This document shows, piece by piece, positions 37,964 to 52,035 of a stretch of 64,000 nt of DNA. Location of the stretch: positions 15,748,001 to 15,812,000 of the forward strand of contig NC_135254.1 in NCBI RefSeq assembly GCF_964204865.1, given 5' to 3'. Within the stretch, counting starts at the first letter, position 1; each line of letters opens with the position of its first letter. A program made the position numbers and the translations under genes. This DNA is from Styela clava (taxonomy: Eukaryota). The notes under the pieces were generated by a model. That model was given only the letters and a program-made list of their open reading frames with translations, did no database searches and had not been told where the DNA came from.

Positions 37964-40335
37964 AAGATTAACTTATCGTATTCTCGGCGGGACGCACGTA
38001 ATTTATACCTACGATTACTGTAGGTAAACCGTAAATATATACTAATATCTCTTTTTATAAAGCTTGAAATATCATGGAAGAATTATATATGACGTTTGTC
38101 TTGTTCATCATTTGAGAATTAAAGTTAGATCTCGCTCTCTAAGAGCCAGTTTCTGTAGAACCAACGACTAACATACCGGGTTGAACCAAGGACTGATCCA
38201 AATTTTAGGGTGCATAATATGGTACCTAGAAAACAAAAAAATATATTTCCAGACGAAAACTCGCGATAAACGTAGTTTGTTCGTCAAACCAGAAAACAAT
38301 ACAAATGCTTATACAGTACATGAAAAAGATTTGAATTTTGGGTAAATGACTGGATGCTTACGATTGATCGGTAAGTTGATAAGAGTCAATCACCACCAAA
38401 TAGGTTCATGAATGCATTCGTGACCAAACGCTAGCGCTTTCAACATAAAATAAAGATGAGAAATTCATGTTTGACTTTATATTTATATACCGTTCCGACG
38501 TAGCATAAAACAATATTAGAGCGTGGCATGAACATAAAAATATATACAAATTTAAGTATTCCTAGCAAAAACGTAATCGTAGTTTTTAGTTACTACATTT
38601 GCGACCAATTTTTTTTAATGATAAAGTATTGATCGAGCTGAGCATCAATACTCATAGTACAATTTTAGAAGAATATCATCATGCTGATTGTATCTCACTG
38701 GAGCGCACGCTTATCTCCAAAATTAGTACGAATATTGCGATTTAAATTCAAAATGCGTTAAGAGCTCTCAAGCAATCAGGTTAGTCTAAGTCGACGGGGG
38801 AAGGATGTCTACATCAATGTCTACATGAATGTCTACATCAATGTCTGTCTGTCTACATCAATGTCTACATCTTAGTCTACATCAATGACCTTCCTACTAC
38901 CAGTGCGTTCGATACCACACTATTCGCTGATGATACAGCTCTGCTTGACTCTGCCACAAATATTGTAGATCTCCAACATGCAATGAATTTGAAAATAACG
39001 CAAATTGACCATTGGTTGAAACTAAATAAATTGTCGCTTAACTATTCGAAAACAAAATTCATGGTTTTTGGGTCTGGAAAAAATATAAGGTTTGATAACT
39101 TTAAATTAGAAGTTGGCACAATTAGCTTAGAAAGAACAAGTACTATAAAATATTTGGGAATAGTTTTGGAAAAATCACATAGATTACTTTTCAAAAAAAC
39201 TTTCTCAATCACTTGGAATGCTTTATAAATTAAGGAGATTTGTAAATCTTGAAACCCTTAAAATAGTTTATAATAGCCTGGCCTTTTCACATCTTCGATA
39301 TGGTATATTATGTTGGGGTAACGCGACAAAAACTGCTTTAAGACCCCTTGCCGTTTTACAAAATAAGATGATTAGATGTATGATGTACCGAGAGTCATCT
39401 AGACAAATACGTATAAATAATGCAAAACTGTATCATCATTGTGGATTTCTTCAATTGAAAGAACTCTACATAAGTGAAGTGGGAAAATTTATGTATCGTT
39501 ATGAAAATGTGCTGCTGCCAGAGTATTTTCAAAACTTTTTTGTCAAAATTTCAAATATCCATCCGTATGAGACCAGGAGTACATCAAATAAATTGTATTT
39601 CACCCCGCGATATAAATCTTCAGGCATGAAGAAATCGCTCAAGCTGGAAGGTATTAATGTATGGCAAAGTATTCCACAGAGTATGAAACAGTGTTCCCCA
39701 CAATTATTTGATCGCAAACTAAAACAACATTTATTAGCGGATTATAATGTGATGCAGTGACGTTCAAATCTCAGTGTATGCTATCAGATTCATAAAATGG
39801 ATAGGAAATCATCATTTTATAGATGTATGTCTCTGTGAAAATTATTGAAGATACTATTATATATAGTCTGAAGTGTTCATATGTACTATATAGCTTTGGA
39901 AATATGGTATTTTAAATTTTTCACCCATTCATAGAAACTGCCTTATTCTCACTATTTGATTTTTGTCGAACATAAAGTAAAATTAAATTTGAGGAAATTA
40001 TAATTAGGCTTACGCCCTTTTTAATTTTTCACTTCTTTTCGCATTTTATTTACTATTAAAAAAAGTATAACCTGCATAATCATGCGATGTTCTTTTTTCT
40101 TGTAATTTTCAATCTTTGATTGATACCACCCTATTTGCAAACTAAAACAGCATTTCAGCGGATCATAATATGATGCAATATCATGCAAATCTCAGTGTAT
40201 GCCTTCAGATTTTTAAAATGGATAGGAATTCACAATCTTATATATGGATTTTTCATATGTCTTTGTGAAAATTATTGAAGATGCTATTATATATAGCCCG
40301 AAGTCATAATTATATGTACTATATAGCTTGGGAAG

Positions 40336-40637
40336 TGTTATGACAGTTTATTTATTATAACCAAAATTATGGCTTTAAGAAACTAAAAACGCATCTTAAC
40401 CTAAACACAAGAACATGCAACATAATTACATTGAGTCACTAAGTATAGCCAAACTTAATCGGACTACCGTCTAATACTCGTAACGGCACGTAACTAATGC
40501 AGTAAGGCAAACGCAGTCCGTTGTCGCTTGACGATAATCAGTGATCACAACACAAAGAACGATAATGTAATAATGACGGAATATAAACAAAGTGTAGCAC
40601 ACTACAACAGGAATAACTGAACTTAATTCTCATAACA
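40336..40637 (-). repeat. Gypsy 3' LTR
   Basis: Direct repeat of 44296-44597, preceded in the sense direction by the polypurine tract. Confidence 0.97.
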
Positions 40638-40647
40638 TTCTCCCCGT

Positions 40648-43600
40648 CTATATTTCAAAACCATAGCGTTCTGGTGGAACACCAATGTTAGTTCGAGTTG
40701 AACGACGTGTGGCAATCCTTTCATTATTAGCATTGTCAGAGCTAATTGGAATTTCAATTTTGAACTCTTCATTTCGGTCAACGTTGCATCCATCATTTAG
40801 TGGCGACGCATTAGTACTTGTTTCACTATCTTCAGGAGAAAAGTCTTGAGACTCTCTATCGTGACTTGAAGATCGTTGGGAGACTGGACAAGGGGACAAG
40901 TCTCTTAACGATACCGTACTCTCCCGCCCATCAGAAAAACGAACTCGAGCATATGCGGGATTCACATTTTTTAGTTCCACTTGTTCAACCAAATCGTCAT
41001 TTTTGTGCGAACGAACGAATTTCCGCAGAAAAGCATGTTTTGATTCGCACAACCAGGTAGGCAATGAATGACCACTGGGAGAGCGGTGTTGGAAGTTGAA
41101 AAATAGTTCATGTGGAGTTGCATTGACTGCTGTGCAAAGCAAAGATCGGAGCGATTGAAGAGCTTTCGGTAACACATATTCCCAATGTGTGATAGGCAGA
41201 TTATATGTACGCAAGCATAAACGCACGGCTTTCCATATGATTCCATTGAATCGTTCAACTTGGGAGTTTCCAATTGGGTGATAAGGCGAGGATTGACTGG
41301 TGGCTACACCACGTTTCAGCAGAAAATCCCTTAGTTCCGCAGACATAAAAGATTTTCCTCTATCAGAGTGTATATAACCAGGTAGTCCGCACAGAGCAAA
41401 TAATTTTTCAAGGCAGCTTATTACTGAAGCGGAAGAAAGATTGGTGCATGGAAATACAAATGGAAATCTAGAATATTCATCGACAATGGTTAGCATGTAT
41501 ACGTTCTTTGTCCGCGATGGCAAAGGTCCCTTGAAGTCCATACTCAGTCTTTCAAATGGCCGTGTGGCCTTGATTAATGTGCCATACGGTGGGGAATAAA
41601 ATTTCGGTTTAAGTTCCGCACATACGCGGCATAATTTACAAGTTCTTTTAACGTCATCAGTCGAGAAAGGCAAATTTTTCGATTTGACGAAATGTAGAAG
41701 TCTTGTGACGCCCGGGTGACATAAGCCTTCGTGTATTTCTTGCAATGACGTGGGAAAAACTGATGCGCATGTAGAACGTGTTAAAGCATCAGGTGCGGCA
41801 TTTTGTTTTCCAGGTCGATATCTAACGTCGTAACTGAAAGAGGCTAGTTCCAGCCTCCAGGACTGAATTTTATTATTCTTTATTTTGGATCGACGACGGT
41901 TATCTAGCATGAAAGAAACCGATCGCTGGTCGGTCACGATAGTGAATGGACGTCTTGCCAGAAAATGGGCCCACTTTCGCACAGCTTCAATGATTGCCGT
42001 TGCCTCCTTTTCTACAGCGGGATAAAACCTCTCGCTCTTCTGTAGAACACGCGACCAAAATGCCACTGGTCGCCCTCCTTGATTCAGTGTAGCTGAAATT
42101 GCAATCTCCGATGCGTCGCATTCTACAACAAATGGAACATGCTCATCAATTGAGCTCAAAGTGGCATTTCCGATTTCTCTTTTTAGTGATTCGAAGTCTT
42201 GTACTGTAGCGCAATCTAAAGGAAATGTTTTCGCTTGGCGGAGTCGTCGCATTTTGTCTGAAAAGTTTACAATCCATTTCGAATAATACGCAAAAAGTCC
42301 AATTATTCTTTGCAGAGCGCGACTATTTGTTGGAGGTAGGAGTTCTCTTAATGGAGCTAGGCGTTCGGGATCTGGAGCTACTGAATTATTACCCACTGTA
42401 TATCCCAAAATGTTAATTTTTCGTACACTTGATACTGTTTTTGCATCATTTAATGTTAAATTGTTTTTCTTAACAGTATCGAGAAATTTCTTCACGTTAT
42501 AGTCATGCTCCTCTTTTGTATGTCCAGCTATAGTTACATTGTCGAGGTATGGAAATGTATCTTTCAGATTGCCTTTTTCCACAATTTCACCCATTAGCCG
42601 CTGAAAAGCTGGTACTCCATTGGTCACTCCAAATGGAATACGATTGAATTCCCAGAGTTTACCATTGCCTTCAAACGCAGTGAAAATTTTATCTTGCTGG
42701 CATATTGGAATCTGATGATACGCGGATTTCAGATCGTAGGTGGAAAACCAGGAATATCCAGCAAGTTCGTTAACCATATCATCAATTCGCGGCAATGGAT
42801 AGGCGTCTAGCTCTGTATAAATGTTTATCGTTTGTGAATAGTCTATGCACAATCGTCGTTTTGAGGTCAATGGGTCCTTCACAACTAAAGGCTGTGCTCT
42901 CCACGGCGAAGAACTTGGCCTGATAATTCCTTCGTTGTACATTCTCGAAACTTCTTTAGCGATGAATTCTTTGTCTAACGCGCCAAAACGGCGAGATTTG
43001 ACAGCTATCGGATGACAATTTTTCATGAGATTAGAAAATAACGAAGCCGGGGTGTAGTTTGCAGCAGCTAAACCACATACTTTTGATTCATATTGAACTA
43101 GAAGTTCAGGACGAGAGCCGTTAAAAGGGAAAATGACTCTTTCATGTTGTCTTTGAAAGTCCTGACCGAGCAATAAATCACAACAAAGACCTCGAAATAC
43201 TTTAAGAGGCACTTTGGTATATGAACGAGTACCAATTATCATATCAGTTAAACAGGATCCAATAGTCGTTCCTTGCAGATGCTGGACAGCCATCACTACA
43301 TTTTCCCGTGAAGGCAAAATTTTCAAACGTAGCATTCTCGCAGTCTTTTCGTTTATAAAAGAGAGAGAGCTTCCGGTATCTATCAACGCAGTTGTATTGC
43401 GACCAGCTATGACAACTGGAAGTGTTGCCGGCAGTAAACACCGTGGTGCTGATTGCAAATCGTGGACTGATGGATTTACTGACGCCGTTATAGATGAAGA
43501 GTCTTCAGATTTATTCATCTTTGATCGGCAAACTTTGGCAAAGTGGCCTTTTTTATCGCATTTGTAGCAATTGGCATTGCGTGCGGGACAATTTTGACGA

Positions 43601-44271
43601 TTGTGGTAATTATATCCACAGAATATACATTTTCGCCCTGTTATACGGCCAGTTACTATACCTTCATTGTCGAAAGAGGTTTCGGAAGTGGCCAATGCCG
43701 AAGGTTGCAATTCGTCGATTCGAGATGCTTCATATGCTGACGAATTACGTTGCGCCAGATCAAGTGATGAAGCTTGTGAAAACGCTAATTCAAGAGTCAA
43801 GTCCTTGTTTTCCAAAAGACGTTGTCGGATGTTATTTGACAAAATACCATTGATAAAAGAATCACGTATAAGTTCGTCGCGGTACTGCGCGGCAGAAACA
43901 TCTTTAAAATTACAATCTTTACTTAGATTACGCAGAGTTTGTAAAAATTCGTCGATGGATTGACCAGTTTGTTGCTTTGCCGTAACTAGCAGATGTCGTG
44001 CAAATATTTCATTCGGCGTCTTGACATATAAGTTATGTAGCACTTCCATAGCTTTACTATAAGCGTCCACATCTTCAATATATTCATAAACATTGTGAGA
44101 TACTGAGTTGATTAGCCTCTTGAGTTTATTCACAGACTGGCCCTCTTGTACACTCATCTCTAATTCTTCAATGTAGTTCTCAAATGTTTTTCGCCAGTGC
44201 TTCCATTCCTTTGCCGCGCTTGGAGAATTCAGATTTAGGTCAAGTCTCACTGGTTTCATCGATGCATCCAT
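40648..44271 (-). CDS. Gypsy gag-pol polyprotein (1207 aa)
   Basis: Two CCHC knuckles (CIFCGYNYHNRQNC, CYKCDKKGHFAKVC); protease LIDTGS; RT LCIDYS/DLKSAYHQ/PFG/YLDN; RNase H CDAS/EKEA/TDQ; integrase HHCC and D-D-E (MDFKG, HSDRG, VERFN). Domain order PR-RT-RH-IN; no chromodomain. Confidence 0.97.
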   Translation of the reverse strand: MDASMKPVRLDLNLNSPSAAKEWKHWRKTFENYIEELEMSVQEGQSVNKLKRLINSVSHNVYEYIEDVDAYSKAMEVLHNLYVKTPNEIFARHLLVTAKQQTGQSIDEFLQTLRNLSKDCNFKDVSAAQYRDELIRDSFINGILSNNIRQRLLENKDLTLELAFSQASSLDLAQRNSSAYEASRIDELQPSALATSETSFDNEGIVTGRITGRKCIFCGYNYHNRQNCPARNANCYKCDKKGHFAKVCRSKMNKSEDSSSITASVNPSVHDLQSAPRCLLPATLPVVIAGRNTTALIDTGSSLSFINEKTARMLRLKILPSRENVVMAVQHLQGTTIGSCLTDMIIGTRSYTKVPLKVFRGLCCDLLLGQDFQRQHERVIFPFNGSRPELLVQYESKVCGLAAANYTPASLFSNLMKNCHPIAVKSRRFGALDKEFIAKEVSRMYNEGIIRPSSSPWRAQPLVVKDPLTSKRRLCIDYSQTINIYTELDAYPLPRIDDMVNELAGYSWFSTYDLKSAYHQIPICQQDKIFTAFEGNGKLWEFNRIPFGVTNGVPAFQRLMGEIVEKGNLKDTFPYLDNVTIAGHTKEEHDYNVKKFLDTVKKNNLTLNDAKTVSSVRKINILGYTVGNNSVAPDPERLAPLRELLPPTNSRALQRIIGLFAYYSKWIVNFSDKMRRLRQAKTFPLDCATVQDFESLKREIGNATLSSIDEHVPFVVECDASEIAISATLNQGGRPVAFWSRVLQKSERFYPAVEKEATAIIEAVRKWAHFLARRPFTIVTDQRSVSFMLDNRRRSKIKNNKIQSWRLELASFSYDVRYRPGKQNAAPDALTRSTCASVFPTSLQEIHEGLCHPGVTRLLHFVKSKNLPFSTDDVKRTCKLCRVCAELKPKFYSPPYGTLIKATRPFERLSMDFKGPLPSRTKNVYMLTIVDEYSRFPFVFPCTNLSSASVISCLEKLFALCGLPGYIHSDRGKSFMSAELRDFLLKRGVATSQSSPYHPIGNSQVERFNGIIWKAVRLCLRTYNLPITHWEYVLPKALQSLRSLLCTAVNATPHELFFNFQHRSPSGHSLPTWLCESKHAFLRKFVRSHKNDDLVEQVELKNVNPAYARVRFSDGRESTVSLRDLSPCPVSQRSSSHDRESQDFSPEDSETSTNASPLNDGCNVDRNEEFKIEIPISSDNANNERIATRRSTRTNIGVPPERYGFEI

Positions 44272-44295
44272 ATTTAAGATTTTAGTTTCTTAAAT

Positions 44296-44597
44296 TGTTA
44301 TGACAGTTTATTTATTATAACCAAAATTATGGCTTTAAGAAACTAAAAACGCATCTTAACCTAAACACAAGAACATGCAACATAATTACATTGAGTCACT
44401 AAGTATAGCCAAACTTAATCGGACTACCGTCTAATACTCGTAACGGCACGTAACTAATGCAGTAAGGCAAACGCAGTCCGTTGTCGCTTGACGATAATCA
44501 GTGATCACAACACAAAGAACGATAATGTAATAATGACGGAATATAAACAAAGTGTAGCACACTACAACAGGAATAACTGAACTTAATTCTCATAACA
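44296..44597 (-). repeat. Gypsy 5' LTR
   Basis: Direct repeat of 40336-40637; AATAAA close to the sense 3' end. Confidence 0.97.
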
Positions 44598-45246
44598 GGA
44601 AGTATGGTATTTTTAATTTTTCACCTATTCATAGAAATTGCCTCATTCTCACGATTTGATTCGTGTCTAACATAAAGTATAATTAATTGTAATTAGCCCG
44701 ACGCCCTTCTTATTCTTTCTCGCATTTTCAATTACTATTAAAAACATGATCTGCGTAATCATGTGATGTTCTTGTTCCTTGTAATTTTTATTCCTATTCC
44801 AATACTTTCGGGGAATTGATTTATGGGGCCTCCTAACCGGGCTTAAAACTCAAAAATTTATATTTGTTCTATTGTAATTATGATGCCTGCCTTAGAGTGT
44901 CCTGTCTTGGTAGAATCTTACCTTAGGGGTCGGTCGACCTTGTTGACCTTGGAAGTCTTGCCCGTCCCCTTCCGTATACATTTTTTTGCTTATTGTTATT
45001 TGCTCATGCTTATTGTATTATGTACTTGTATCGGAAATAAATCATTATCTATCTATCTATGAGACGGCTTGATCATATGGCGAACCATGGCCTCTCGCCC
45101 GGTTACCAGTCCATGTCGGGTAATGTAATAATACTTTCTGGAGCAGAGTGGGGTCCGTATCTTTCGTTGATCTTATAGCAGTGAAGACTTTACCGAACCT
45201 GCAGAAATTGCAATTGTTACGTTTTGTTGACTTGGTTGAATTTGTG

Positions 45247-46296: not shown

Positions 46297-49200
46297 ATGG
46301 GAGAAATTGGCGATGTCTTGAGGGCACAGCAAAGTATTTTATCGAAAAAAGCACAAGCATATTCTAAAGTATTTCAAAACAAAGGAACTTCTGAGGAAAA
46401 GAGAATTAAAGTTATTCATGCGATTCTATATGATGTTATCGCTGAAAACAAAAATCGTTCTGGCACTAATATTTCTGAAATAGTTTTAACCTGTGTACGA
46501 TATCTTATTCAAAACTGGAAGATTATCGAAGATACAAAAGCAATACAGCTTGATGTTTTAATTAATGGAGCATTTAAGCGGGCTTTGGAGATAAAAGAAG
46601 ATAATGAATATATAAAACAACTTGTTGATTGCCTTCAGGATCTCATTCCATTACCTGGTGGATGCTCAAAAAAAGTATCTGATTGGATCGCTTATAAGTT
46701 GAAAAATTTTTACAAAAATGACATCAAATGCAGATGCCAAAAGGATTGTGAAGTGGTGAAATGTTTTGAAATGGAATTGCTTTCTTTGTGCATAAGCAGC
46801 AGCTCTGGATCAACTTCTGAATTTGAATTGATAAGTAATGTTATGATTACATCAGAAAAACATTTGAGTCGATCTAACTTCTCAGACAGTCATGTGAAAT
46901 GTGTCGCAAATACAAGTATGAATTTTCTTCTCAATTCTAAAATAAGTGAAAATAATAAGTCGAGTTCACAGTTTCAAACACTTTTGAAAATGATCGAAAA
47001 TATCATTCTTCTTAATAATGGTAAAAATGAGCAGTCTGAACGAAGAATCAGTGAACATATGGAAAATATTGAAACTTCCGTATCAACTCTACAAAGTTTA
47101 AACAAAAAGTCTGAACAATCTGATACAAATGGACATACAAAAGTGTACCTGACTATTTTTAAATGTTATTTAACAATGGTAACAAATATCGAAGGAAAAA
47201 TAAACGGTTCTTTGAAAAATATTGTGAAATGTATCAACATGTTTTCTAATTTAACAAATGGCACAAAGAGTCTTGAAGTTTTGAACAAAGTTGTGAATTT
47301 TTATTACTTTGCTTTTAAAATTACAACAACTGATTGTATGAAAATGATTTTAGAAGACCTCAACGTTCTTTTGGAAAGGAATGTGGAAATATTATCTTTA
47401 AAGGATAATATATTAGATTCAGTTCTATATTTTCTAGAAATTGTGACGAGAATATGTGCTGCTGGGATCAATTATAAAGGAACAGATAATTTTGATTCTT
47501 CCGTTGAAACCGTTGCTCAAAATTTGTTCAATTGTATTTTTGAGTATGAATTTGAAGATAGCGGTAAAACAAGTGCTTTGTTCACCAATGTTGCCATTGT
47601 TCTTGTAAAAGTAAAAAGAAAACTGTTAAAGAATTTATCGGCAATGAAAATTGTAGAAAAATCGCTCGTGAAAGTTCAATATTCTGTCGCAAAACCATTG
47701 ATAAGTCATTGGGTGAAAGCTAAACTAAGGGAAAGCAATTGCTTAGATGGAAAAAAGCTGGAGCAATTCAAAAAACGAACTATATTGCATGAAATCAAAA
47801 ATTCAATCTCAAAACAATCTATGGAAGAAATTCTTCTGGCAGAACTTGAAATATACCGTTCAATAAATAACACAGAAATGGAGCAATTATCTGTTATCAA
47901 CACGATTTCGAATCAATGTCATCTGCAAATGAGGAGAAAAGCATTATTATCGTGCAACAAAATAGAATTGGAATATGAGCTGGGGGAATGTAGTGAACAC
48001 AATTTTAAAACAATTTATCCTTTATGCAAGCCAGATTCTGAAACATGGGAATGTTATGTTCAAGTCAAATTAATTGAATTTATGGAAATGTGGAGTAAAG
48101 CAGTGCAAAACAGTTCGGACAAATCTTTATATATCAATACACAAATATTAAATGAAATTGTATTGTTGTGTGAAAAGGCAGCTGAAGAAAAATATCCATT
48201 TTCAATGCATGAGAAGACTTTCAAAGCTATACATAAAGTTTCAGCTTTGTTGCAACTATTTCAAAAACCTATCATGAATGTACGATTGATGACAGCATGT
48301 CACGTATTTCTGTCTGATTGCGATGAAACAGAAGAAACTATCGTTACGTTGTGGAATAATTGTTCTGTGCTTTGTGAGCTTGGTTTCGGTTATCTAGCAC
48401 TTCGGCAAGTAAAGCTAGCGGAAAAATATTCAAAATTGGCTTCGGTTGCGTTTAACAAATACATTGATTATATTGATGGATGTAATGATTCTGAAACAGG
48501 TTCAAAGGCGCGTAACACGCTGTTTACAAAATTTAAAATTTTGCTCGCCGAAATCAACTGTGCTCTCGGTAATGATGTAGAAGCACAAGAAGTTATAGAC
48601 GGTTGTATGAAGGAAGATTTTTTAAGCTTGGAAGTTATTCAAAGATCAATTACTGCTTTATTTTGTTCCGTCCAAGCTATGAGTTCAAATTGCAATATTT
48701 TAGGACCTGATTCAACTGAAATGCGAATTTCTAAACTGCTGGCAACATCTAGGAGGATCGCTTCTCTAAAAGTGTCCATACTTCCAAATTTACATACTGT
48801 TCAGAGCAAAAGTGGATCGGAAGAAGGAATAATATTTGATATAAAACCAAATGAGGGTTATTATGATCCATTTATACAATTAAGCGCAATGAATTATTTT
48901 TTTGAAAATTTATATAAAGTTTCAGAAGCATATTTAATCATGGGTGATCCTAAAATGGCAAATGGGTATTGCCAAATTGGATTGGTGCATTCGAAATATC
49001 TCTGTCTCAAGAATTGGTATGCTTCATTTTGTGTAGTCAAATTACAAATTGCGTCTTTATCTCAGGATGAGGAAAATTTTCCTCAGCTTTGTAAATATTT
49101 TTGTCAAGTAAATGAATGCGAATGCATGTCTGATAAAAGTGTACTCGATGATAGCGTTCTCCAATGTGAAAACGATGATTATGATGACATTGGTAAGGAC

Positions 49201-52035
49201 GTCAATGAAGTTAGGGACGTTGAGCATGATATGGTTGGATCTACAGATGATGGCGCTATTCAATTTTCTACTCCTGCAATAGATATAGATTGTTATCAAA
49301 ATCCAACAACTGATCTCTCTGCTAGTCCTTCTGTCATGAAACGAAAAAAGTTGAAACTTTTACCGATGCCGAAATTATTTCTGCAAAAGAAAGTGAAGAG
49401 TTGTTTATGCGAACCTCACTTCAATTTTCAGTCCATCAAAATGCAATTGGACTATGTCAACACAATAGCTGAATATTACGCAAGATCAAATGCATTAGAA
49501 GCAGGATTTGAAGTTTGTAAAAAGATTTTCAAAGCAATTTCCAATTTGGACACTCGATCTAATTTAATTCCGCTTATGGACGATGTCGATTTAAACGAAT
49601 TTTTTTTGCCACAAGTTGCATCTAGTCATATCGTAAATTCAAGATTACACTTGCTTAAACTCAACATTGAGGAATCTCTAAGCAGTTGCAATGAAGCAAC
49701 AAAGTCATTGGATTTGGATAATTTCACAGACATTAATTATTTTATAATAAAGTCGAGGATAAAATTTCAGCATTCCTGTATTGCTGGACCGAAATCATCG
49801 TCCAAAAATGTTTCCATTGATTCTGCATTGTTAAATGCAGTTATCGACGGACTTTCAAAATGCCATATCTCCTCTACAGAAGAGACCGAAGTACACACTC
49901 CTGTAATGGAAAGAAGAAGAAAGAAAGTATCTACTACTAAAAAAGCAAAACCTGGCTCTGTTCCAGCACGGGCGAACAGGGCAACTTCATCCAGAACTAA
50001 AAAGAAAGAACCTTCGAAAAATTTCAAAATATTCACAGAAAAAAATGAAAAAGAAAACAAGCTACCCGTACCGGAGTATATTACGTCAAGAAGTCCGTCA
50101 CCATGCAGTAAAAACGTTTATGAATTTATGTCCAGCGGTGACGATGAAAAAACTCCTGCGAAAAAATCTCTAAAAAATTCACAAAACATTATGCAAGCAC
50201 GTAAAGCCGCAACACGAAGGCATAGAAAACAATTTGGCAACATTTATTCAGATGATGATAAGGAAAGAGTGAGGGGTAGAATTGGTAAACCCAGTGTTGC
50301 CAGAAGTTTTACTAAACCTGGAAAAGGCAAACAAATTTTAAATGAAGTTCCAGATTCTAACTATTCAACTGAAATTATGCTGACTTATTTATTAGATGCA
50401 TTGTCATCTGCGAATGTGGTTGGTGATTTTTTGACAATGAAATTATGTGCTCAAGCAATCTCTGCTTGTCATCATGTTTCCGCTAAGGAAAGTGAAAGAG
50501 TACAAGATATTATCAAGGCTACTGCGTTCCATCTCTTTTCAGTTGGCGTTACCACAAGATCAGCGATGCATCTTTATGCTAAAACAATCAAAAATGTGCC
50601 ATGTTCGTCTAAAAAGTGTGTGCCTACTTGTACTTGCGTTCACAAATTAATGAAGGAGGCAAGCCCCGGTCATGCTTTGAAATCATGTACAACAGACAGT
50701 GATGGTTATATCAATAGCATTACAGATCTTCTGCCTAAGGATTGGACAATTTGTGTTATATCTCTATCACAGCAATCTGGAGGTTCCAAACTTCTTCTTT
50801 CCAGACTTAGACATGGCATTGCTCCATTACATATTCAAACTGATGGAACTTATTTAGAAGAGATCTTGGAAAAATTCAGTGATTTGATGGTAAGAAATAC
50901 TGCTGCATTGAAATCAAGGGATAGAAATTATTGGTGGACACAAAGACGTAACTTCAATACTGAACTTGGAAGCATCCTTGATACATTGGGTACCAAAGCT
51001 CTTGGCTGTAACATCGGGATTTTACGTGGCAAGCTGGTGGATGAAGCAGTAGCAAATAAATTTTATGATACTGTTAACGATATTATGGAAAAATTCAAGG
51101 TTCCAAAATACAAAGAACAGAATATTGAAGTGTTACTAAACTCTTGGGGCTTCTTGACAGCCGAACAAAAATTACAAGGCATTATTGATGTGTGTGGAAA
51201 TACAACTACGACAAAAAACATCTCAGCGATTTCTAGTGCACTAGAAACATCATCAAGTGACTTAGATCTAAACAATCAATCCAGGCATCATGTTATACTA
51301 ATACTAGATAAGGATGTCCAACTTTTGCCATGGGAGGTCACAGTTCAACTTCAGGGTGAGTCGGTAACCAGATTACCATCTGCAGATCTGTTGAAGCTCC
51401 AACTACACCTATTAAATTCTGCTGAAAACAATGTTGCAAAAAAAGGTGTGAATTTAAAAGATGTTTCTTATATTTTAAACCCAAATGGGGATTTAGTAAA
51501 ATCAGAAGAACGATATAAAGATTGGTTTCAGGGTATGAAATCATGGAAGGGAATTGTATCACGAGAACCTCGACAAAAAGAATGGATTTCAAGTATCACA
51601 GAATTTGATCTCTTCATTTTTTGTGGACACGGATCAGGGACAAAGTACGTTTCTAGCACAGATTTTCGCAACATAAAAACAAGAGCTGCTGCATTACTGA
51701 TGGGTTGTGGAAGCGCAAAATTAGACCAACCAGGTGTTTTTGAGCCTGGAGGTATTGTCATAAATTATCTTATGACGGGATCGCCGTGTATCCTAGGATG
51801 TCTTTGGAAGGTCACCGATAAGGACATCGACATGTTTTTGTGTAAACTTTTGGAAAATTGGGCAGATGGTAAAAAAGAAATGATGCCACGATGCACAGAT
51901 AAAGCTCGGAAAGCCTTGAAAATGCCTCACATCAATGGAGCTGCTTGTGTTATTTATGGACTTCCTATTCACTGCCAACTTACGATAGCAAAGTTTTTAA
52001 AAAGTATTCCCAAAGAATTCTTAAGTTCATCTTGA
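46297..52035 (+). CDS. ESPL1: Separase (peptidase C50), single-exon CDS, 1912 aa
   Basis: C-terminal separase motifs YWWTQRR, LILDKDVQLLPWE, VTRLPS, YILNPNGDL, FIFCGHGSG (His1778), LLMGCGS (Cys1804) and GCLWKVTDKDID, preceded by a long helical N-terminus. Acceptor TTCACAG ends at 46281, 15 nt before the ATG. Confidence 0.96.
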   Translation: MGEIGDVLRAQQSILSKKAQAYSKVFQNKGTSEEKRIKVIHAILYDVIAENKNRSGTNISEIVLTCVRYLIQNWKIIEDTKAIQLDVLINGAFKRALEIKEDNEYIKQLVDCLQDLIPLPGGCSKKVSDWIAYKLKNFYKNDIKCRCQKDCEVVKCFEMELLSLCISSSSGSTSEFELISNVMITSEKHLSRSNFSDSHVKCVANTSMNFLLNSKISENNKSSSQFQTLLKMIENIILLNNGKNEQSERRISEHMENIETSVSTLQSLNKKSEQSDTNGHTKVYLTIFKCYLTMVTNIEGKINGSLKNIVKCINMFSNLTNGTKSLEVLNKVVNFYYFAFKITTTDCMKMILEDLNVLLERNVEILSLKDNILDSVLYFLEIVTRICAAGINYKGTDNFDSSVETVAQNLFNCIFEYEFEDSGKTSALFTNVAIVLVKVKRKLLKNLSAMKIVEKSLVKVQYSVAKPLISHWVKAKLRESNCLDGKKLEQFKKRTILHEIKNSISKQSMEEILLAELEIYRSINNTEMEQLSVINTISNQCHLQMRRKALLSCNKIELEYELGECSEHNFKTIYPLCKPDSETWECYVQVKLIEFMEMWSKAVQNSSDKSLYINTQILNEIVLLCEKAAEEKYPFSMHEKTFKAIHKVSALLQLFQKPIMNVRLMTACHVFLSDCDETEETIVTLWNNCSVLCELGFGYLALRQVKLAEKYSKLASVAFNKYIDYIDGCNDSETGSKARNTLFTKFKILLAEINCALGNDVEAQEVIDGCMKEDFLSLEVIQRSITALFCSVQAMSSNCNILGPDSTEMRISKLLATSRRIASLKVSILPNLHTVQSKSGSEEGIIFDIKPNEGYYDPFIQLSAMNYFFENLYKVSEAYLIMGDPKMANGYCQIGLVHSKYLCLKNWYASFCVVKLQIASLSQDEENFPQLCKYFCQVNECECMSDKSVLDDSVLQCENDDYDDIGKDVNEVRDVEHDMVGSTDDGAIQFSTPAIDIDCYQNPTTDLSASPSVMKRKKLKLLPMPKLFLQKKVKSCLCEPHFNFQSIKMQLDYVNTIAEYYARSNALEAGFEVCKKIFKAISNLDTRSNLIPLMDDVDLNEFFLPQVASSHIVNSRLHLLKLNIEESLSSCNEATKSLDLDNFTDINYFIIKSRIKFQHSCIAGPKSSSKNVSIDSALLNAVIDGLSKCHISSTEETEVHTPVMERRRKKVSTTKKAKPGSVPARANRATSSRTKKKEPSKNFKIFTEKNEKENKLPVPEYITSRSPSPCSKNVYEFMSSGDDEKTPAKKSLKNSQNIMQARKAATRRHRKQFGNIYSDDDKERVRGRIGKPSVARSFTKPGKGKQILNEVPDSNYSTEIMLTYLLDALSSANVVGDFLTMKLCAQAISACHHVSAKESERVQDIIKATAFHLFSVGVTTRSAMHLYAKTIKNVPCSSKKCVPTCTCVHKLMKEASPGHALKSCTTDSDGYINSITDLLPKDWTICVISLSQQSGGSKLLLSRLRHGIAPLHIQTDGTYLEEILEKFSDLMVRNTAALKSRDRNYWWTQRRNFNTELGSILDTLGTKALGCNIGILRGKLVDEAVANKFYDTVNDIMEKFKVPKYKEQNIEVLLNSWGFLTAEQKLQGIIDVCGNTTTTKNISAISSALETSSSDLDLNNQSRHHVILILDKDVQLLPWEVTVQLQGESVTRLPSADLLKLQLHLLNSAENNVAKKGVNLKDVSYILNPNGDLVKSEERYKDWFQGMKSWKGIVSREPRQKEWISSITEFDLFIFCGHGSGTKYVSSTDFRNIKTRAAALLMGCGSAKLDQPGVFEPGGIVINYLMTGSPCILGCLWKVTDKDIDMFLCKLLENWADGKKEMMPRCTDKARKALKMPHINGAACVIYGLPIHCQLTIAKFLKSIPKEFLSSS

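What the first reader, a model, noticed from the sequence alone, without database searches (positions are those of the whole stretch)
44272..44348. Intact Gypsy element lacks a tRNA primer-binding site and has a perfect 15-bp LTR/PBS fold-back: probable self-priming retrotransposon
Seen in sequence: only 24 nt (sense ATTTAAGAAACTAAAATCTTAAAT) separate the 5' LTR from the ATG, with no TGG-initiated tRNA PBS. The PBS position (sense TTTAAGAAACTAAAA, 44280-44294, 1 nt after the LTR) is the exact reverse complement of TTTTAGTTTCTTAAA inside the LTR (44334-44348), closing a 39-nt loop. That LTR segment contains an Inr-like TTAGTT, and AATAAA lies just before the LTR end, so R-U5 would be only about 50 nt. 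The leader can also form a competing ATTTAAGA/TCTTAAAT hairpin against the start codon. Established: fission-yeast Tf1 primes from its own 5' end annealed to the PBS after RNase H cleavage. Inference: this chromodomain-less, Mag-like animal element uses a similar tRNA-independent mechanism, possibly with an RNA switch between priming and translation.
Basis: partly seen in the sequence, partly recalled or inferred. Interest (0 to 1): 0.8.

Follow-up and report, generated by a model that had tools for sequence, protein, structure and literature searches.

The report
Self-priming Gypsy retrotransposon in sea squirt
A young, intact 4.3-kb Gypsy-type retrotransposon of the sea squirt Styela clava has no tRNA primer site; the spot where the primer should bind pairs with part of the element's own LTR, and about 25 related elements keep the same pairing with different letters, so this lineage most likely starts reverse transcription from its own RNA, as fission-yeast Tf1 does.

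Summary
The element lies on the minus strand. It has identical 302-bp LTRs, a 5-bp target duplication, one 1207-aa gag-PR-RT-RH-IN ORF and a 24-nt leader without TGG. The 15 nt starting 1 nt after the LTR's CA are the exact complement of an LTR segment 39 nt upstream; 0 of 20,000 shuffles reached 14 nt.

The decisive evidence is comparative. In 21 related elements (37-58% protein identity, public metagenome contigs) the same two sites pair. Pairing is 94% of cells, and 11 of 15 pairs change on both sides. Slid controls give 26-51%, and 0 of 100,000 arm permutations reach the observed match.

A primer site that differs between families yet always matches its own LTR excludes a shared host tRNA. 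It fits Tf1-type self-priming, for which I give confidence 0.8. Not shown: the transcription start, the cleavage, and the primer itself. The public runs were fragmentary contigs.

The lineage has no chromodomain, so it lies outside the Tf1/sushi group for which self-priming is described, and I found no paper reporting it. Two other follow-ups in this scan reached the same reading on other DNA of this genome (s1-822913, s1-815931).

The parts
44296..44597 (-). 5' LTR (302 bp, TG..CA)
   Evidence: identical to the 3' LTR; boundaries fixed by comparing the two copies and their flanks
40336..40637 (-). 3' LTR (302 bp), 100% identical to the 5' LTR
44598..44602 (-). Target-site duplication CTTCC (upstream copy)
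40331..40335 (-). Target-site duplication CTTCC (downstream copy)
44334..44348 (-). Proposed self-primer: 15-nt LTR segment ending in TTAAA and followed by GCC. It is the 5' arm of the conserved duplex. The same segment in the 3' LTR lies at 40374..40388.
   Evidence: conserved and covarying in relatives
44280..44294 (-). Primer-binding site: exact complement of the LTR segment, starting 1 nt after the LTR's terminal CA (3' arm)
   Evidence: same position and register in 21 relatives
44320..44333 (-). Small stem-loop GCCA..TGGT directly after the 5' arm, stacked on the duplex in the minimum-energy fold. A candidate counterpart of Tf1's accessory duplexes.
   Evidence: suggestive only
44307..44316 (-). 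Two overlapping AATAAA hexamers in the loop, 11-20 nt before the LTR end (putative poly(A) signal)
   Evidence: function inferred
44272..44295 (-). 24-nt leader between the LTR and the ATG. It contains the primer site and an 8-bp local hairpin that is not conserved in relatives.
40648..44271 (-). Single gag-PR-RT-RNase H-integrase ORF, 1207 aa. Catalytic residues of PR, RNase H and IN are invariant in the family; the RT motif reads YLDN.
40638..40645 (-). Polypurine tract GGGGAGAA abutting the 3' LTR
   Evidence: similar G-rich tracts before the 3' LTR in relatives

Best explanation
This is a recently active, compact (4,262 bp) chromodomain-less Ty3/gypsy retrotransposon of the tunicate Styela clava. 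It primes minus-strand DNA synthesis with its own RNA, in the manner of Tf1. The genomic RNA starts in the LTR, at or shortly before the 15-nt segment 44348..44334. That segment folds back over a 39-nt loop and pairs with the primer-binding site 44294..44280, which begins 1 nt after the LTR's CA. The element's RNase H would cut after the duplex, between TTAAA and GCC, leaving a 3'-OH. From this end RT would copy the single spacer nucleotide and then the LTR end. Strand transfers and plus-strand priming from the GGGGAGAA tract would follow as in other LTR elements. Shown here: the architecture, the absence of a tRNA-type site, and deep conservation of the pairing through compensatory change. 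Inferred: the transcription start, the cleavage, and priming itself.
For: 1. The 15-nt perfect complement lies exactly where a PBS must lie, 1 nt after the CA. 0 of 20,000 dinucleotide-preserving shuffles reached 14 nt.
2. The element is young and apparently competent. It has identical LTRs, a TSD, an intact ORF with invariant PR/RNase H/IN catalytic residues, and at least 16 5'-LTR-plus-gag copies at 94-100% identity in the genome. 12 of those 16 keep the perfect 15-bp pairing. The other 4 have changes in the 5' arm that read as private post-insertion mutations; for the two checked copies (L007, L014, one duplicated insertion) the change is absent from their own 3' LTR.
3. 21 related elements from public metagenome contigs (37-58% protein identity) show the same architecture. 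The LTR carries [variable 8-10 nt]+TTAAA+(G/A)CC, followed by a loop of 21-70 nt, then CA + 1 nt + TTTAA + [reverse complement of the variable part]. The ATG follows 15-35 nt after the start of the PBS (77 nt in L067).
4. On alignment A2, 94% of cells pair, against 26-51% when the partner is slid by 1-3 columns. 11 of 15 pairs have changes on both sides (57 cells). 0 of 500 shuffles reach the observed covariation score.
5. In the 8 variable positions, each element's own arms match 7.81 of 8, against 4.75 of 8 for arms of different elements. 0 of 100,000 permutations reach the observed total.
6. L036 and L037 are close relatives that differ by one compensated pair.
7. No TGG lies between the LTR and the ATG. 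Several relatives have only 15-18 nt from the PBS start to the ATG, which leaves no room for another site. 13 host tRNA classes sampled give at most 7 nt of complementarity.
8. Five chance matches to the fixed anchors elsewhere in the genome show no complementarity in the variable arms.
9. The minimum-energy fold of the region contains the long-range duplex, z = -3.4. 19 of the 21 family members fold the same way on their own; L046 keeps most of the duplex and L101 does not.
10. The Tf1 mechanism and its spread in the Tf1/sushi group are described in PMC4600332, PMC5341516 and bioRxiv 10.1101/2022.12.06.519325.
Against: There is no direct evidence of priming. The public runs that hold the element are kept only as assembled contigs, broken at repeat junctions and partly continuing into flanking DNA. 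They show neither a 5' end nor that the element is transcribed. The duplex is 12-18 bp here, longer than the 11 nt I recall for Tf1. The other two duplexes of Tf1's three-duplex 'pretzel' are not clearly present: a short stem after the primer arm is only suggestive (4.2 bp against 2.8 bp in shuffles; 55% paired at a fixed alignment position). A strict Inr at the 5' arm is not conserved. Only part of the host tRNA set was sampled. The relatives were chosen because their 5' ends were available, and three loci were uninformative (L084, L091, L110).
Confidence: 0.8

Rival explanations
1. The conserved LTR-leader duplex is real but serves another purpose, and the primer is something else still unidentified. 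One candidate purpose is masking the poly(A) signal in the 5' copy of the LTR: the 3' arm exists only after the 5' LTR, so the same signal stays open at the 3' end. Packaging or dimerisation are others.
For: In 11 of 21 relatives the last six letters of the 5' arm are A[AT]TAAA, a canonical poly(A) hexamer. Three more, this element among them, carry such a hexamer in the loop instead, and a fourth relative (L067) carries one in both places. The pairing would hide it only at the 5' end. Covariation shows that the pairing matters, not what it is for.
Against: An LTR element must have a minus-strand primer. The only sequence between the LTR and the ATG in several relatives is the 3' arm itself. 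That arm sits exactly 1 nt after CA in all 21 relatives, which is the PBS position. 10 of 21 have no canonical hexamer in the arm. Masking and priming do not exclude each other.
Confidence: 0.12
2. A host tRNA, or an internal tRNA fragment as in copia and Ty5, primes at the leader or at the start of the ORF, and the LTR complement is incidental.
For: Only 13 tRNA classes of the host were sampled. The ATG is followed by G, which gives a TGG at 44270..44268.
Against: No TGG lies in the leader. The letters after the ATG-embedded TGG differ between families at synonymous positions, so no conserved tRNA end can match. The primer-site letters differ between families and track the element's own LTR. 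The best tRNA complement found was 7 nt.
Confidence: 0.03
3. The 15-nt match is a chance product of A+T-rich, low-complexity sequence.
For: The region is A+T-rich. The fixed anchor motifs alone are common in the genome (73 matches, against 259 for the reversed control).
Against: 0 of 20,000 shuffles reach 14 nt. The same pairing occurs at the same place in 21 divergent relatives with compensatory changes. Chance anchor matches show no arm complementarity.
Confidence: 0.01
4. One reading: the leader toggles between the priming duplex and a local hairpin (44295..44288 with 44279..44272) next to the start codon, switching the RNA between reverse transcription and translation.
For: The 8-bp hairpin exists, at -4.6 kcal/mol against -1.2 +/- 1.4 for shuffles. 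It overlaps the primer site, so the two folds exclude each other.
Against: It is not conserved. 7 of the 16 relatives' leaders that could be folded give 0 kcal/mol and most of the rest do not differ from shuffles. The hairpin is much weaker than the 15-bp duplex.
Confidence: 0.08

Closest known systems
Tf1/Tf2 of Schizosaccharomyces pombe and the Tf1/sushi group of chromoviruses (including Tj1, Tosmo1-3, sushi-ichi)
   Same: There is no tRNA-type PBS, and the site just after the 5' LTR is complementary to an LTR segment near the start of the transcript. Both have a single gag-pol ORF and a compact leader. In Tf1 the self-primer pairs with the PBS and the element's RNase H cuts it off to prime (PMC4600332, PMC5341516, bioRxiv 10.1101/2022.12.06.519325).
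   Different: There is no chromodomain (one search lists). The duplex is 12-18 bp with a conserved TTAAA|RCC end. The segment from the 5' arm to the LTR end is very short, 53 nt here. Tf1's full three-duplex 'pretzel' was not demonstrated. Priming is untested. The hosts are animals across several phyla.
Predicted self-primers in plant and fungal Tcn1 chromoviruses and plant Ty1/copia TAR elements
   Same: Self-priming is inferred from the sequence architecture alone, as a lineage-wide trait (PMC6317226, PMC2864245).
   Different: They belong to different lineages. Tcn1 is chromoviral and related to Tf1/sushi, and TAR is Ty1/copia. None is an animal non-chromovirus.
Mag lineage of animal Ty3/gypsy elements (Mag, SURL/C-clade, Jule, Steamer)
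   Same: These are compact single-ORF animal Gypsy elements with short LTRs. The LTR ends here (TGTTATGA ... TCATAACA) resemble the Mag A/C terminal motifs tabulated in PMC3601003.
   Different: Steamer and its relatives carry a 12-nt PBS for tRNA-Leu directly after the LTR (PMC8905726), and MchSLE1 has a putative tRNA-Asn PBS and a YxDD box (PMC11046912). This element has neither. The phylogenetic placement was not tested here.
Cigr-1 of Ciona intestinalis (a separate Gypsy clade in the Gypsy Database; also found in molluscs, PMC6238403)
   Same: From my memory of the original description, not checked here: a tunicate host, LTRs of about 245 bp and a single ORF of about 3.6 kb. That is nearly the size of this element.
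   Different: No Cigr-1 sequence was available to compare. I do not know whether a primer site was ever assigned to it.

Membership tests
Ty3/gypsy (Metaviridae) LTR retrotransposon | Domain order PR-RT-RNase H-integrase in pol | tested here: met
   Pfam matches run in the order aspartyl protease 285-372, RVT_1 483-626, RT_RNaseH 712-812, Integrase_H2C2 843-889, rve 903-999.
Ty3/gypsy (Metaviridae) LTR retrotransposon | Direct LTRs with TG..CA ends, a target-site duplication, and a polypurine tract before the 3' LTR | tested here: met
   302-bp identical LTRs, TSD CTTCC, GGGGAGAA abutting the 3' LTR.
Self-priming LTR retrotransposons (mechanistic class defined by Tf1) | No tRNA-complementary PBS next to the 5' LTR | tested here: met
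   No TGG in the 24-nt leader. At most 7 nt of complementarity to 13 sampled host tRNA classes. The site varies between families.
Self-priming LTR retrotransposons (mechanistic class defined by Tf1) | The sequence immediately after the 5' LTR is complementary to a segment of the same LTR | tested here: met
   15 of 15 nt, starting 1 nt after CA.
Self-priming LTR retrotransposons (mechanistic class defined by Tf1) | The complementarity is maintained in related elements by compensatory change | tested here: met
   94% paired; 11 of 15 pairs changed on both sides; slid controls 26-51%. 0 of 100,000 permutations.
Self-priming LTR retrotransposons (mechanistic class defined by Tf1) | The LTR arm is the 5' end of the genomic RNA | tested here: inconclusive
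   Only assembled contigs were available. Their breaks sit 31 letters from repeat junctions and some run into flanking DNA.
Self-priming LTR retrotransposons (mechanistic class defined by Tf1) | RNase H cleavage of the duplex, and minus-strand DNA joined to the element's own RNA | not testable with these tools
   This needs biochemistry. The RNase H catalytic residues D719, E756, D781 and D828 are invariant.
Self-priming LTR retrotransposons (mechanistic class defined by Tf1) | Accessory duplexes flanking the primer:PBS duplex ('pretzel' structure) | tested here: inconclusive
   A stem RCC(U)..(A)GGY follows the 5' arm in most members (mean 4.2 bp against 2.8 bp shuffled). It is not at a fixed position (55% paired).
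Tf1/sushi group (chromoviruses) | Chromodomain at the C-terminus of integrase | tested here: not met
   No chromodomain family among the Pfam matches at E up to 0.01, and none in the precomputed Pfam lists of the 120 closest relatives. Some chromoviruses are reported to have lost it (bioRxiv 10.1101/2022.12.06.519325).
Tf1/sushi group (chromoviruses) | Placement inside the group in an RT-RH-IN tree | not tested
   No named reference sequences (Tf1, sushi, Ty3, Mag, SURL, Cigr-1) could be obtained with the tools.
Mag lineage | Placement with Mag/SURL in an RT-RH tree | not tested
   Only the LTR terminal motifs were compared with PMC3601003 Table 3 (7 of 8 letters at each end against Mag C). 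The PBS type differs from Steamer (PMC8905726).

The most novel reading that the evidence does not exclude
Self-priming is the defining, ancient trait of a large chromodomain-less Ty3/gypsy clade spread across animal phyla. Named hits include tunicates, crustaceans, a sea anemone and a nematode, and there are many marine and soil metagenome contigs. It was either inherited from the common ancestor shared with Tf1/sushi or invented independently. In this clade the primer arm has a second role: its TTAAA end is often the poly(A) hexamer. The same duplex would therefore prime reverse transcription and hide the 5' poly(A) signal. All of this runs on a reverse transcriptase whose active-site motif is YLDN instead of YxDD.
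Probability: 0.25. Interest if true: 0.7.

Novelty: new member of a known kind. Interest (0 to 1): 0.55.

Why it matters
Self-priming has been described for the Tf1/sushi chromoviruses and, by prediction, for a few plant lineages. A second large animal lineage that does without a host tRNA would show the strategy is more widespread than thought. It also bears on whether hairpin priming preceded tRNA priming, as discussed in PMC3601003.

There are three practical consequences. First, annotation pipelines that require a tRNA-type primer site will score these abundant elements as defective. Second, host defences that target the primer site with 3' tRNA fragments (abstract of PMC7472051) cannot act on them. 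Third, the covarying 13-15-bp duplex is a ready signature for finding and classifying the clade.

The Styela family is young and multi-copy, so transcript 5' ends and cDNA intermediates could be looked for in the animal itself.

Tried and rejected
1. Covariation within the host's own family. The 16 copies are 94-100% alike and the leader is invariant, so they give no information. The four changes in the 5' arm look like private post-insertion changes.
2. The look-up of encoding contigs, to fetch genomic loci of the closest protein relatives.
3. Mapping the transcription start with public runs. All holders are Logan contigs, 'RNA' is only a guess, depth is low, contigs break at repeat junctions and some continue into flanking DNA. 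No conclusion was possible.
4. A variant LTR arm seen as a loose end in the reads was traced to a diverged solo LTR without a leader, which is uninformative.
5. A full host tRNA set could not be obtained. The family search returned mostly one large gene cluster, giving 13 isoacceptor classes.
6. A genome-wide search for the fixed anchors. The pattern is no commoner than its reversed control, so it is useless as a detector, but five such hits served as negative controls.
7. Rfam gave no match in the element.
8. A fixed-position second helix was rejected as a general feature.
9. A strict Inr at the 5' arm is not conserved.
10. A TATA box about 30 nt upstream was not seen by eye in this element or in relatives.
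11. Ten literature searches found no report of self-priming in Mag-, Cigr-1- or tunicate-associated Gypsy elements. The Tf1 primary papers were not held.

Full report
**The element.** It lies on the minus strand of the window. The two LTRs (44597..44296 and 40637..40336) are 302 bp, identical, and run TG..CA. They are flanked by a 5-bp duplication, CTTCC.

Between the LTRs lie four parts:
- a 24-nt leader;
- one ORF of 1207 aa (44271..40648);
- the stop codon;
- the purine tract GGGGAGAA, which abuts the 3' LTR.

Pfam places an aspartyl protease, RT, RNase H, integrase zinc domain and integrase core in Ty3/gypsy order. No chromodomain is found. The whole element is 4,262 bp.

**Copies and host.** The genome holds at least 16 copies of the 5' LTR plus the start of gag at 94-100% identity, and many more LTRs. 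Some copies share flanking sequence and are therefore duplicates of one insertion. The host is the ascidian Styela clava: the neighbouring 1912-aa separase ORF is 99% identical to a S. clava protein.

**The observation.**
- The 15 nt at 44294..44280 begin 1 nt after the LTR's terminal CA.
- They are the exact reverse complement of 44348..44334 inside the LTR, and the two sites enclose 39 nt.
- The 15-mer occurs three times in the window, against 0.07 expected.
- No dinucleotide-preserving shuffle of the LTR, out of 20,000, gave a complement of 14 nt or more to the leader.
- The leader has no TGG.
- As RNA, the region folds with the long-range duplex in its minimum-energy structure, z = -3.4.

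**Relatives.** The protein belongs to a very large family of single-ORF elements of about 1200 aa (969 proteins at E <= 1e-20).

Where both LTRs or the 5' end were present, the same architecture appeared again and again:
- Inside the LTR there is a variable stretch of 8-10 nt, followed by TTAAA and then (G/A)CC.
- A loop of 21-70 nt follows.
- Then come the LTR's CA, one nucleotide, TTTAA, and the reverse complement of the variable stretch.
- The ATG lies only 15-35 nt after the start of this site in all but one of the 16 relatives where it could be placed (L067: 77 nt).

About 25 loci show the pairing, and they represent roughly 18 different sequences. In total:
- 21 loci, counting this element, went into alignment A2.
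- L033, L035, L044, L045, L047 and L103 are further copies or variants.
- L040, L058 and L060 show it only in part, because of a contig edge or a damaged 5' LTR.
- L084, L091 and L110 were uninformative.

**Covariation.**
- On alignment A2 (21 sequences), the 15-pair helix forms standard pairs in 94% of cells. When the 3' partner is slid by 1-3 columns this falls to 26-51%.
- 11 of 15 pairs carry changes on both sides (57 cells), and no shuffle of 500 reaches the observed covariation score.
- In my own anchored comparison, the eight variable positions match 7.81 of 8 within an element and 4.75 of 8 between elements. 0 of 100,000 permutations of the partners reach the observed total.
- L036 and L037, otherwise near-identical, differ by one compensated pair.
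- In L038, L039, L046 and L086 even the 'conserved' core changes on both sides.
- The three A:U pairs at the LTR-proximal end and one central G:C pair never vary or nearly so.
- Five chance matches to the fixed anchors elsewhere in the Styela genome have no complementarity in the variable arms.

**What the pairing means.** A primer site whose letters differ from family to family, yet always match the element's own LTR, cannot be the target of a conserved host tRNA. In addition no member has TGG there, and in several the 3' arm is essentially the whole leader. A sample of 13 host tRNA classes gave at most 7 nt of complementarity.

The 3' arm sits exactly where minus-strand synthesis must begin, 1 nt from the CA. 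This is the signature used to infer Tf1-type self-priming. In Tf1 a segment at the 5' end of the RNA pairs with the PBS and is cut off by the element's RNase H to serve as primer (PMC4600332; PMC5341516; bioRxiv 10.1101/2022.12.06.519325). I therefore take self-priming as the best explanation, at 0.8.

The strict boundary between TTAAA and RCC is the natural candidate for the cut. In Tf1 the primer is reported not to be removed (title of ref. 61 in PMC6317226). If the plus strand copies it, that would rewrite the PBS from the primer in every cycle, which would explain both the perfect match in young copies and the ease of covariation. This last step is my inference.

**What is not shown.** I could not map the RNA's 5' end. 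The sixteen runs offered are all stored as assembled contigs and 'RNA' is a guess. In the four runs I laid on the element, the pieces break 31 letters from repeat junctions and some run into flanking DNA.

However, the strict consensus is present in only 2 of 21 members.

The duplex is 12-18 bp, so the start is probably at or a few nucleotides before 44344-44348.

Tf1's structure has three duplexes. Here a short stem, RCC(U)..(A)GGY, follows the primer arm in most members and stacks on the duplex in the predicted folds. Its position is not fixed, and the statistics are weak.

The 8-bp hairpin inside the leader exists in this family only. Most relatives' leaders have no structure at all. I do not consider it a feature of the mechanism.

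**A possible second role.** In 11 of 21 members the last six letters of the primer arm read A[AT]TAAA. Three of the remaining ten, including this element, carry such a hexamer in the loop instead. Pairing with the leader would hide this poly(A) signal at the 5' end of the RNA and leave it open at the 3' end, where no leader follows. This is untested. It is compatible with priming and does not replace it.

**Classification.** The element is a Ty3/gypsy member. It fails the chromodomain test for the Tf1/sushi chromoviruses, though some chromoviruses have lost that domain. I could not build a tree because no named references were obtainable.

Its LTR ends resemble the Mag A/C motifs of PMC3601003. 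Against that, the characterised Mag-lineage elements Steamer and MchSLE1 have tRNA-type sites (PMC8905726, PMC11046912).

From memory, Cigr-1 of Ciona has nearly the same size and layout, and it is a separate clade also found in molluscs (PMC6238403). That remains a lead only.

**Prior knowledge.** Ten full-text searches found self-priming discussed only for Tf1/sushi, Tj1, Tcn1, plant TAR and Dictyostelium Skipper. None mentioned Mag, Cigr-1, tunicate or sea-urchin elements. Older subscription papers were not searchable. Two other follow-ups in this scan reached the same reading on other pieces of this genome. I treat them as agreement, not as evidence.

**Verdict.** The mechanism is known; the lineage is, as far as I can tell, newly assigned to it.

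Noticed in passing
window 42538-42549 (minus strand; residues 575-578 of the ORF): The RT active-site motif reads YLDN, not YxDD. In the 25-sequence family alignment 19 members have YLDN or FLDN and 6 have YLDD or YQDD. All other catalytic residues (PR, RNase H, IN) are invariant. The element looks recently active, so an Asn at the second Asp position seems to be tolerated. No paper in the searchable library mentions YLDN together with reverse transcriptase.
   Followed up: partly
A2 alignment (window 44329-44334 and the equivalent places in L036-L039, L051, L055, L067, L085, L086, L095, L101): In 11 of 21 family members the last six letters of the proposed primer arm form a canonical poly(A) hexamer, A[AT]TAAA. 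The primer:PBS duplex could therefore also mask the 5' poly(A) signal.
   Followed up: partly
G000:C2:15,881,000-15,942,000 (loci L112-L141, L153): A very large cluster of tRNA genes, mostly tRNA-Lys(TTT) with tRNA-Cys(GCA) and tRNA-Trp(CCA), spaced a few hundred bases to about 5 kb apart. My counts are inflated by overlapping loci. The tRNA family search reported 33,143 first-look candidates genome-wide.
   Followed up: no
window 39218-39760 (+) and 39736-39833 / 40157-40254: A 180-aa ORF that looks like the C-terminal part of a non-LTR (LINE-type) reverse transcriptase lies just beyond the element's 3' LTR. Next to it is a 98-nt direct repeat, 81% identical, 421 bp apart.
   Followed up: no
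L007/L014 (G000:C13:173,957 and 293,808); L011/L013 (G000:C19:765,709 and 642,419); L010/L016 (G000:C3): Pairs of element copies share the same flanking sequence and, for some pairs, private deletions. Some 'copies' are therefore segmental duplicates of one insertion, and the number of independent insertions is below the copy count.
   Followed up: no
L111 (G000:C10:15,651,000 region): A diverged solo LTR of the same family with near-matching 5-bp flanks (GCCAC / GCCAT). Its primer-arm region has changed (AGTTCCTTACAGCC). It has no leader to compare.
   Followed up: yes
window 46297-52035 (+): The single-exon separase ORF (1912 aa) is 99% identical to Styela clava LOC120343948. This identifies the host species.
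   Followed up: yes
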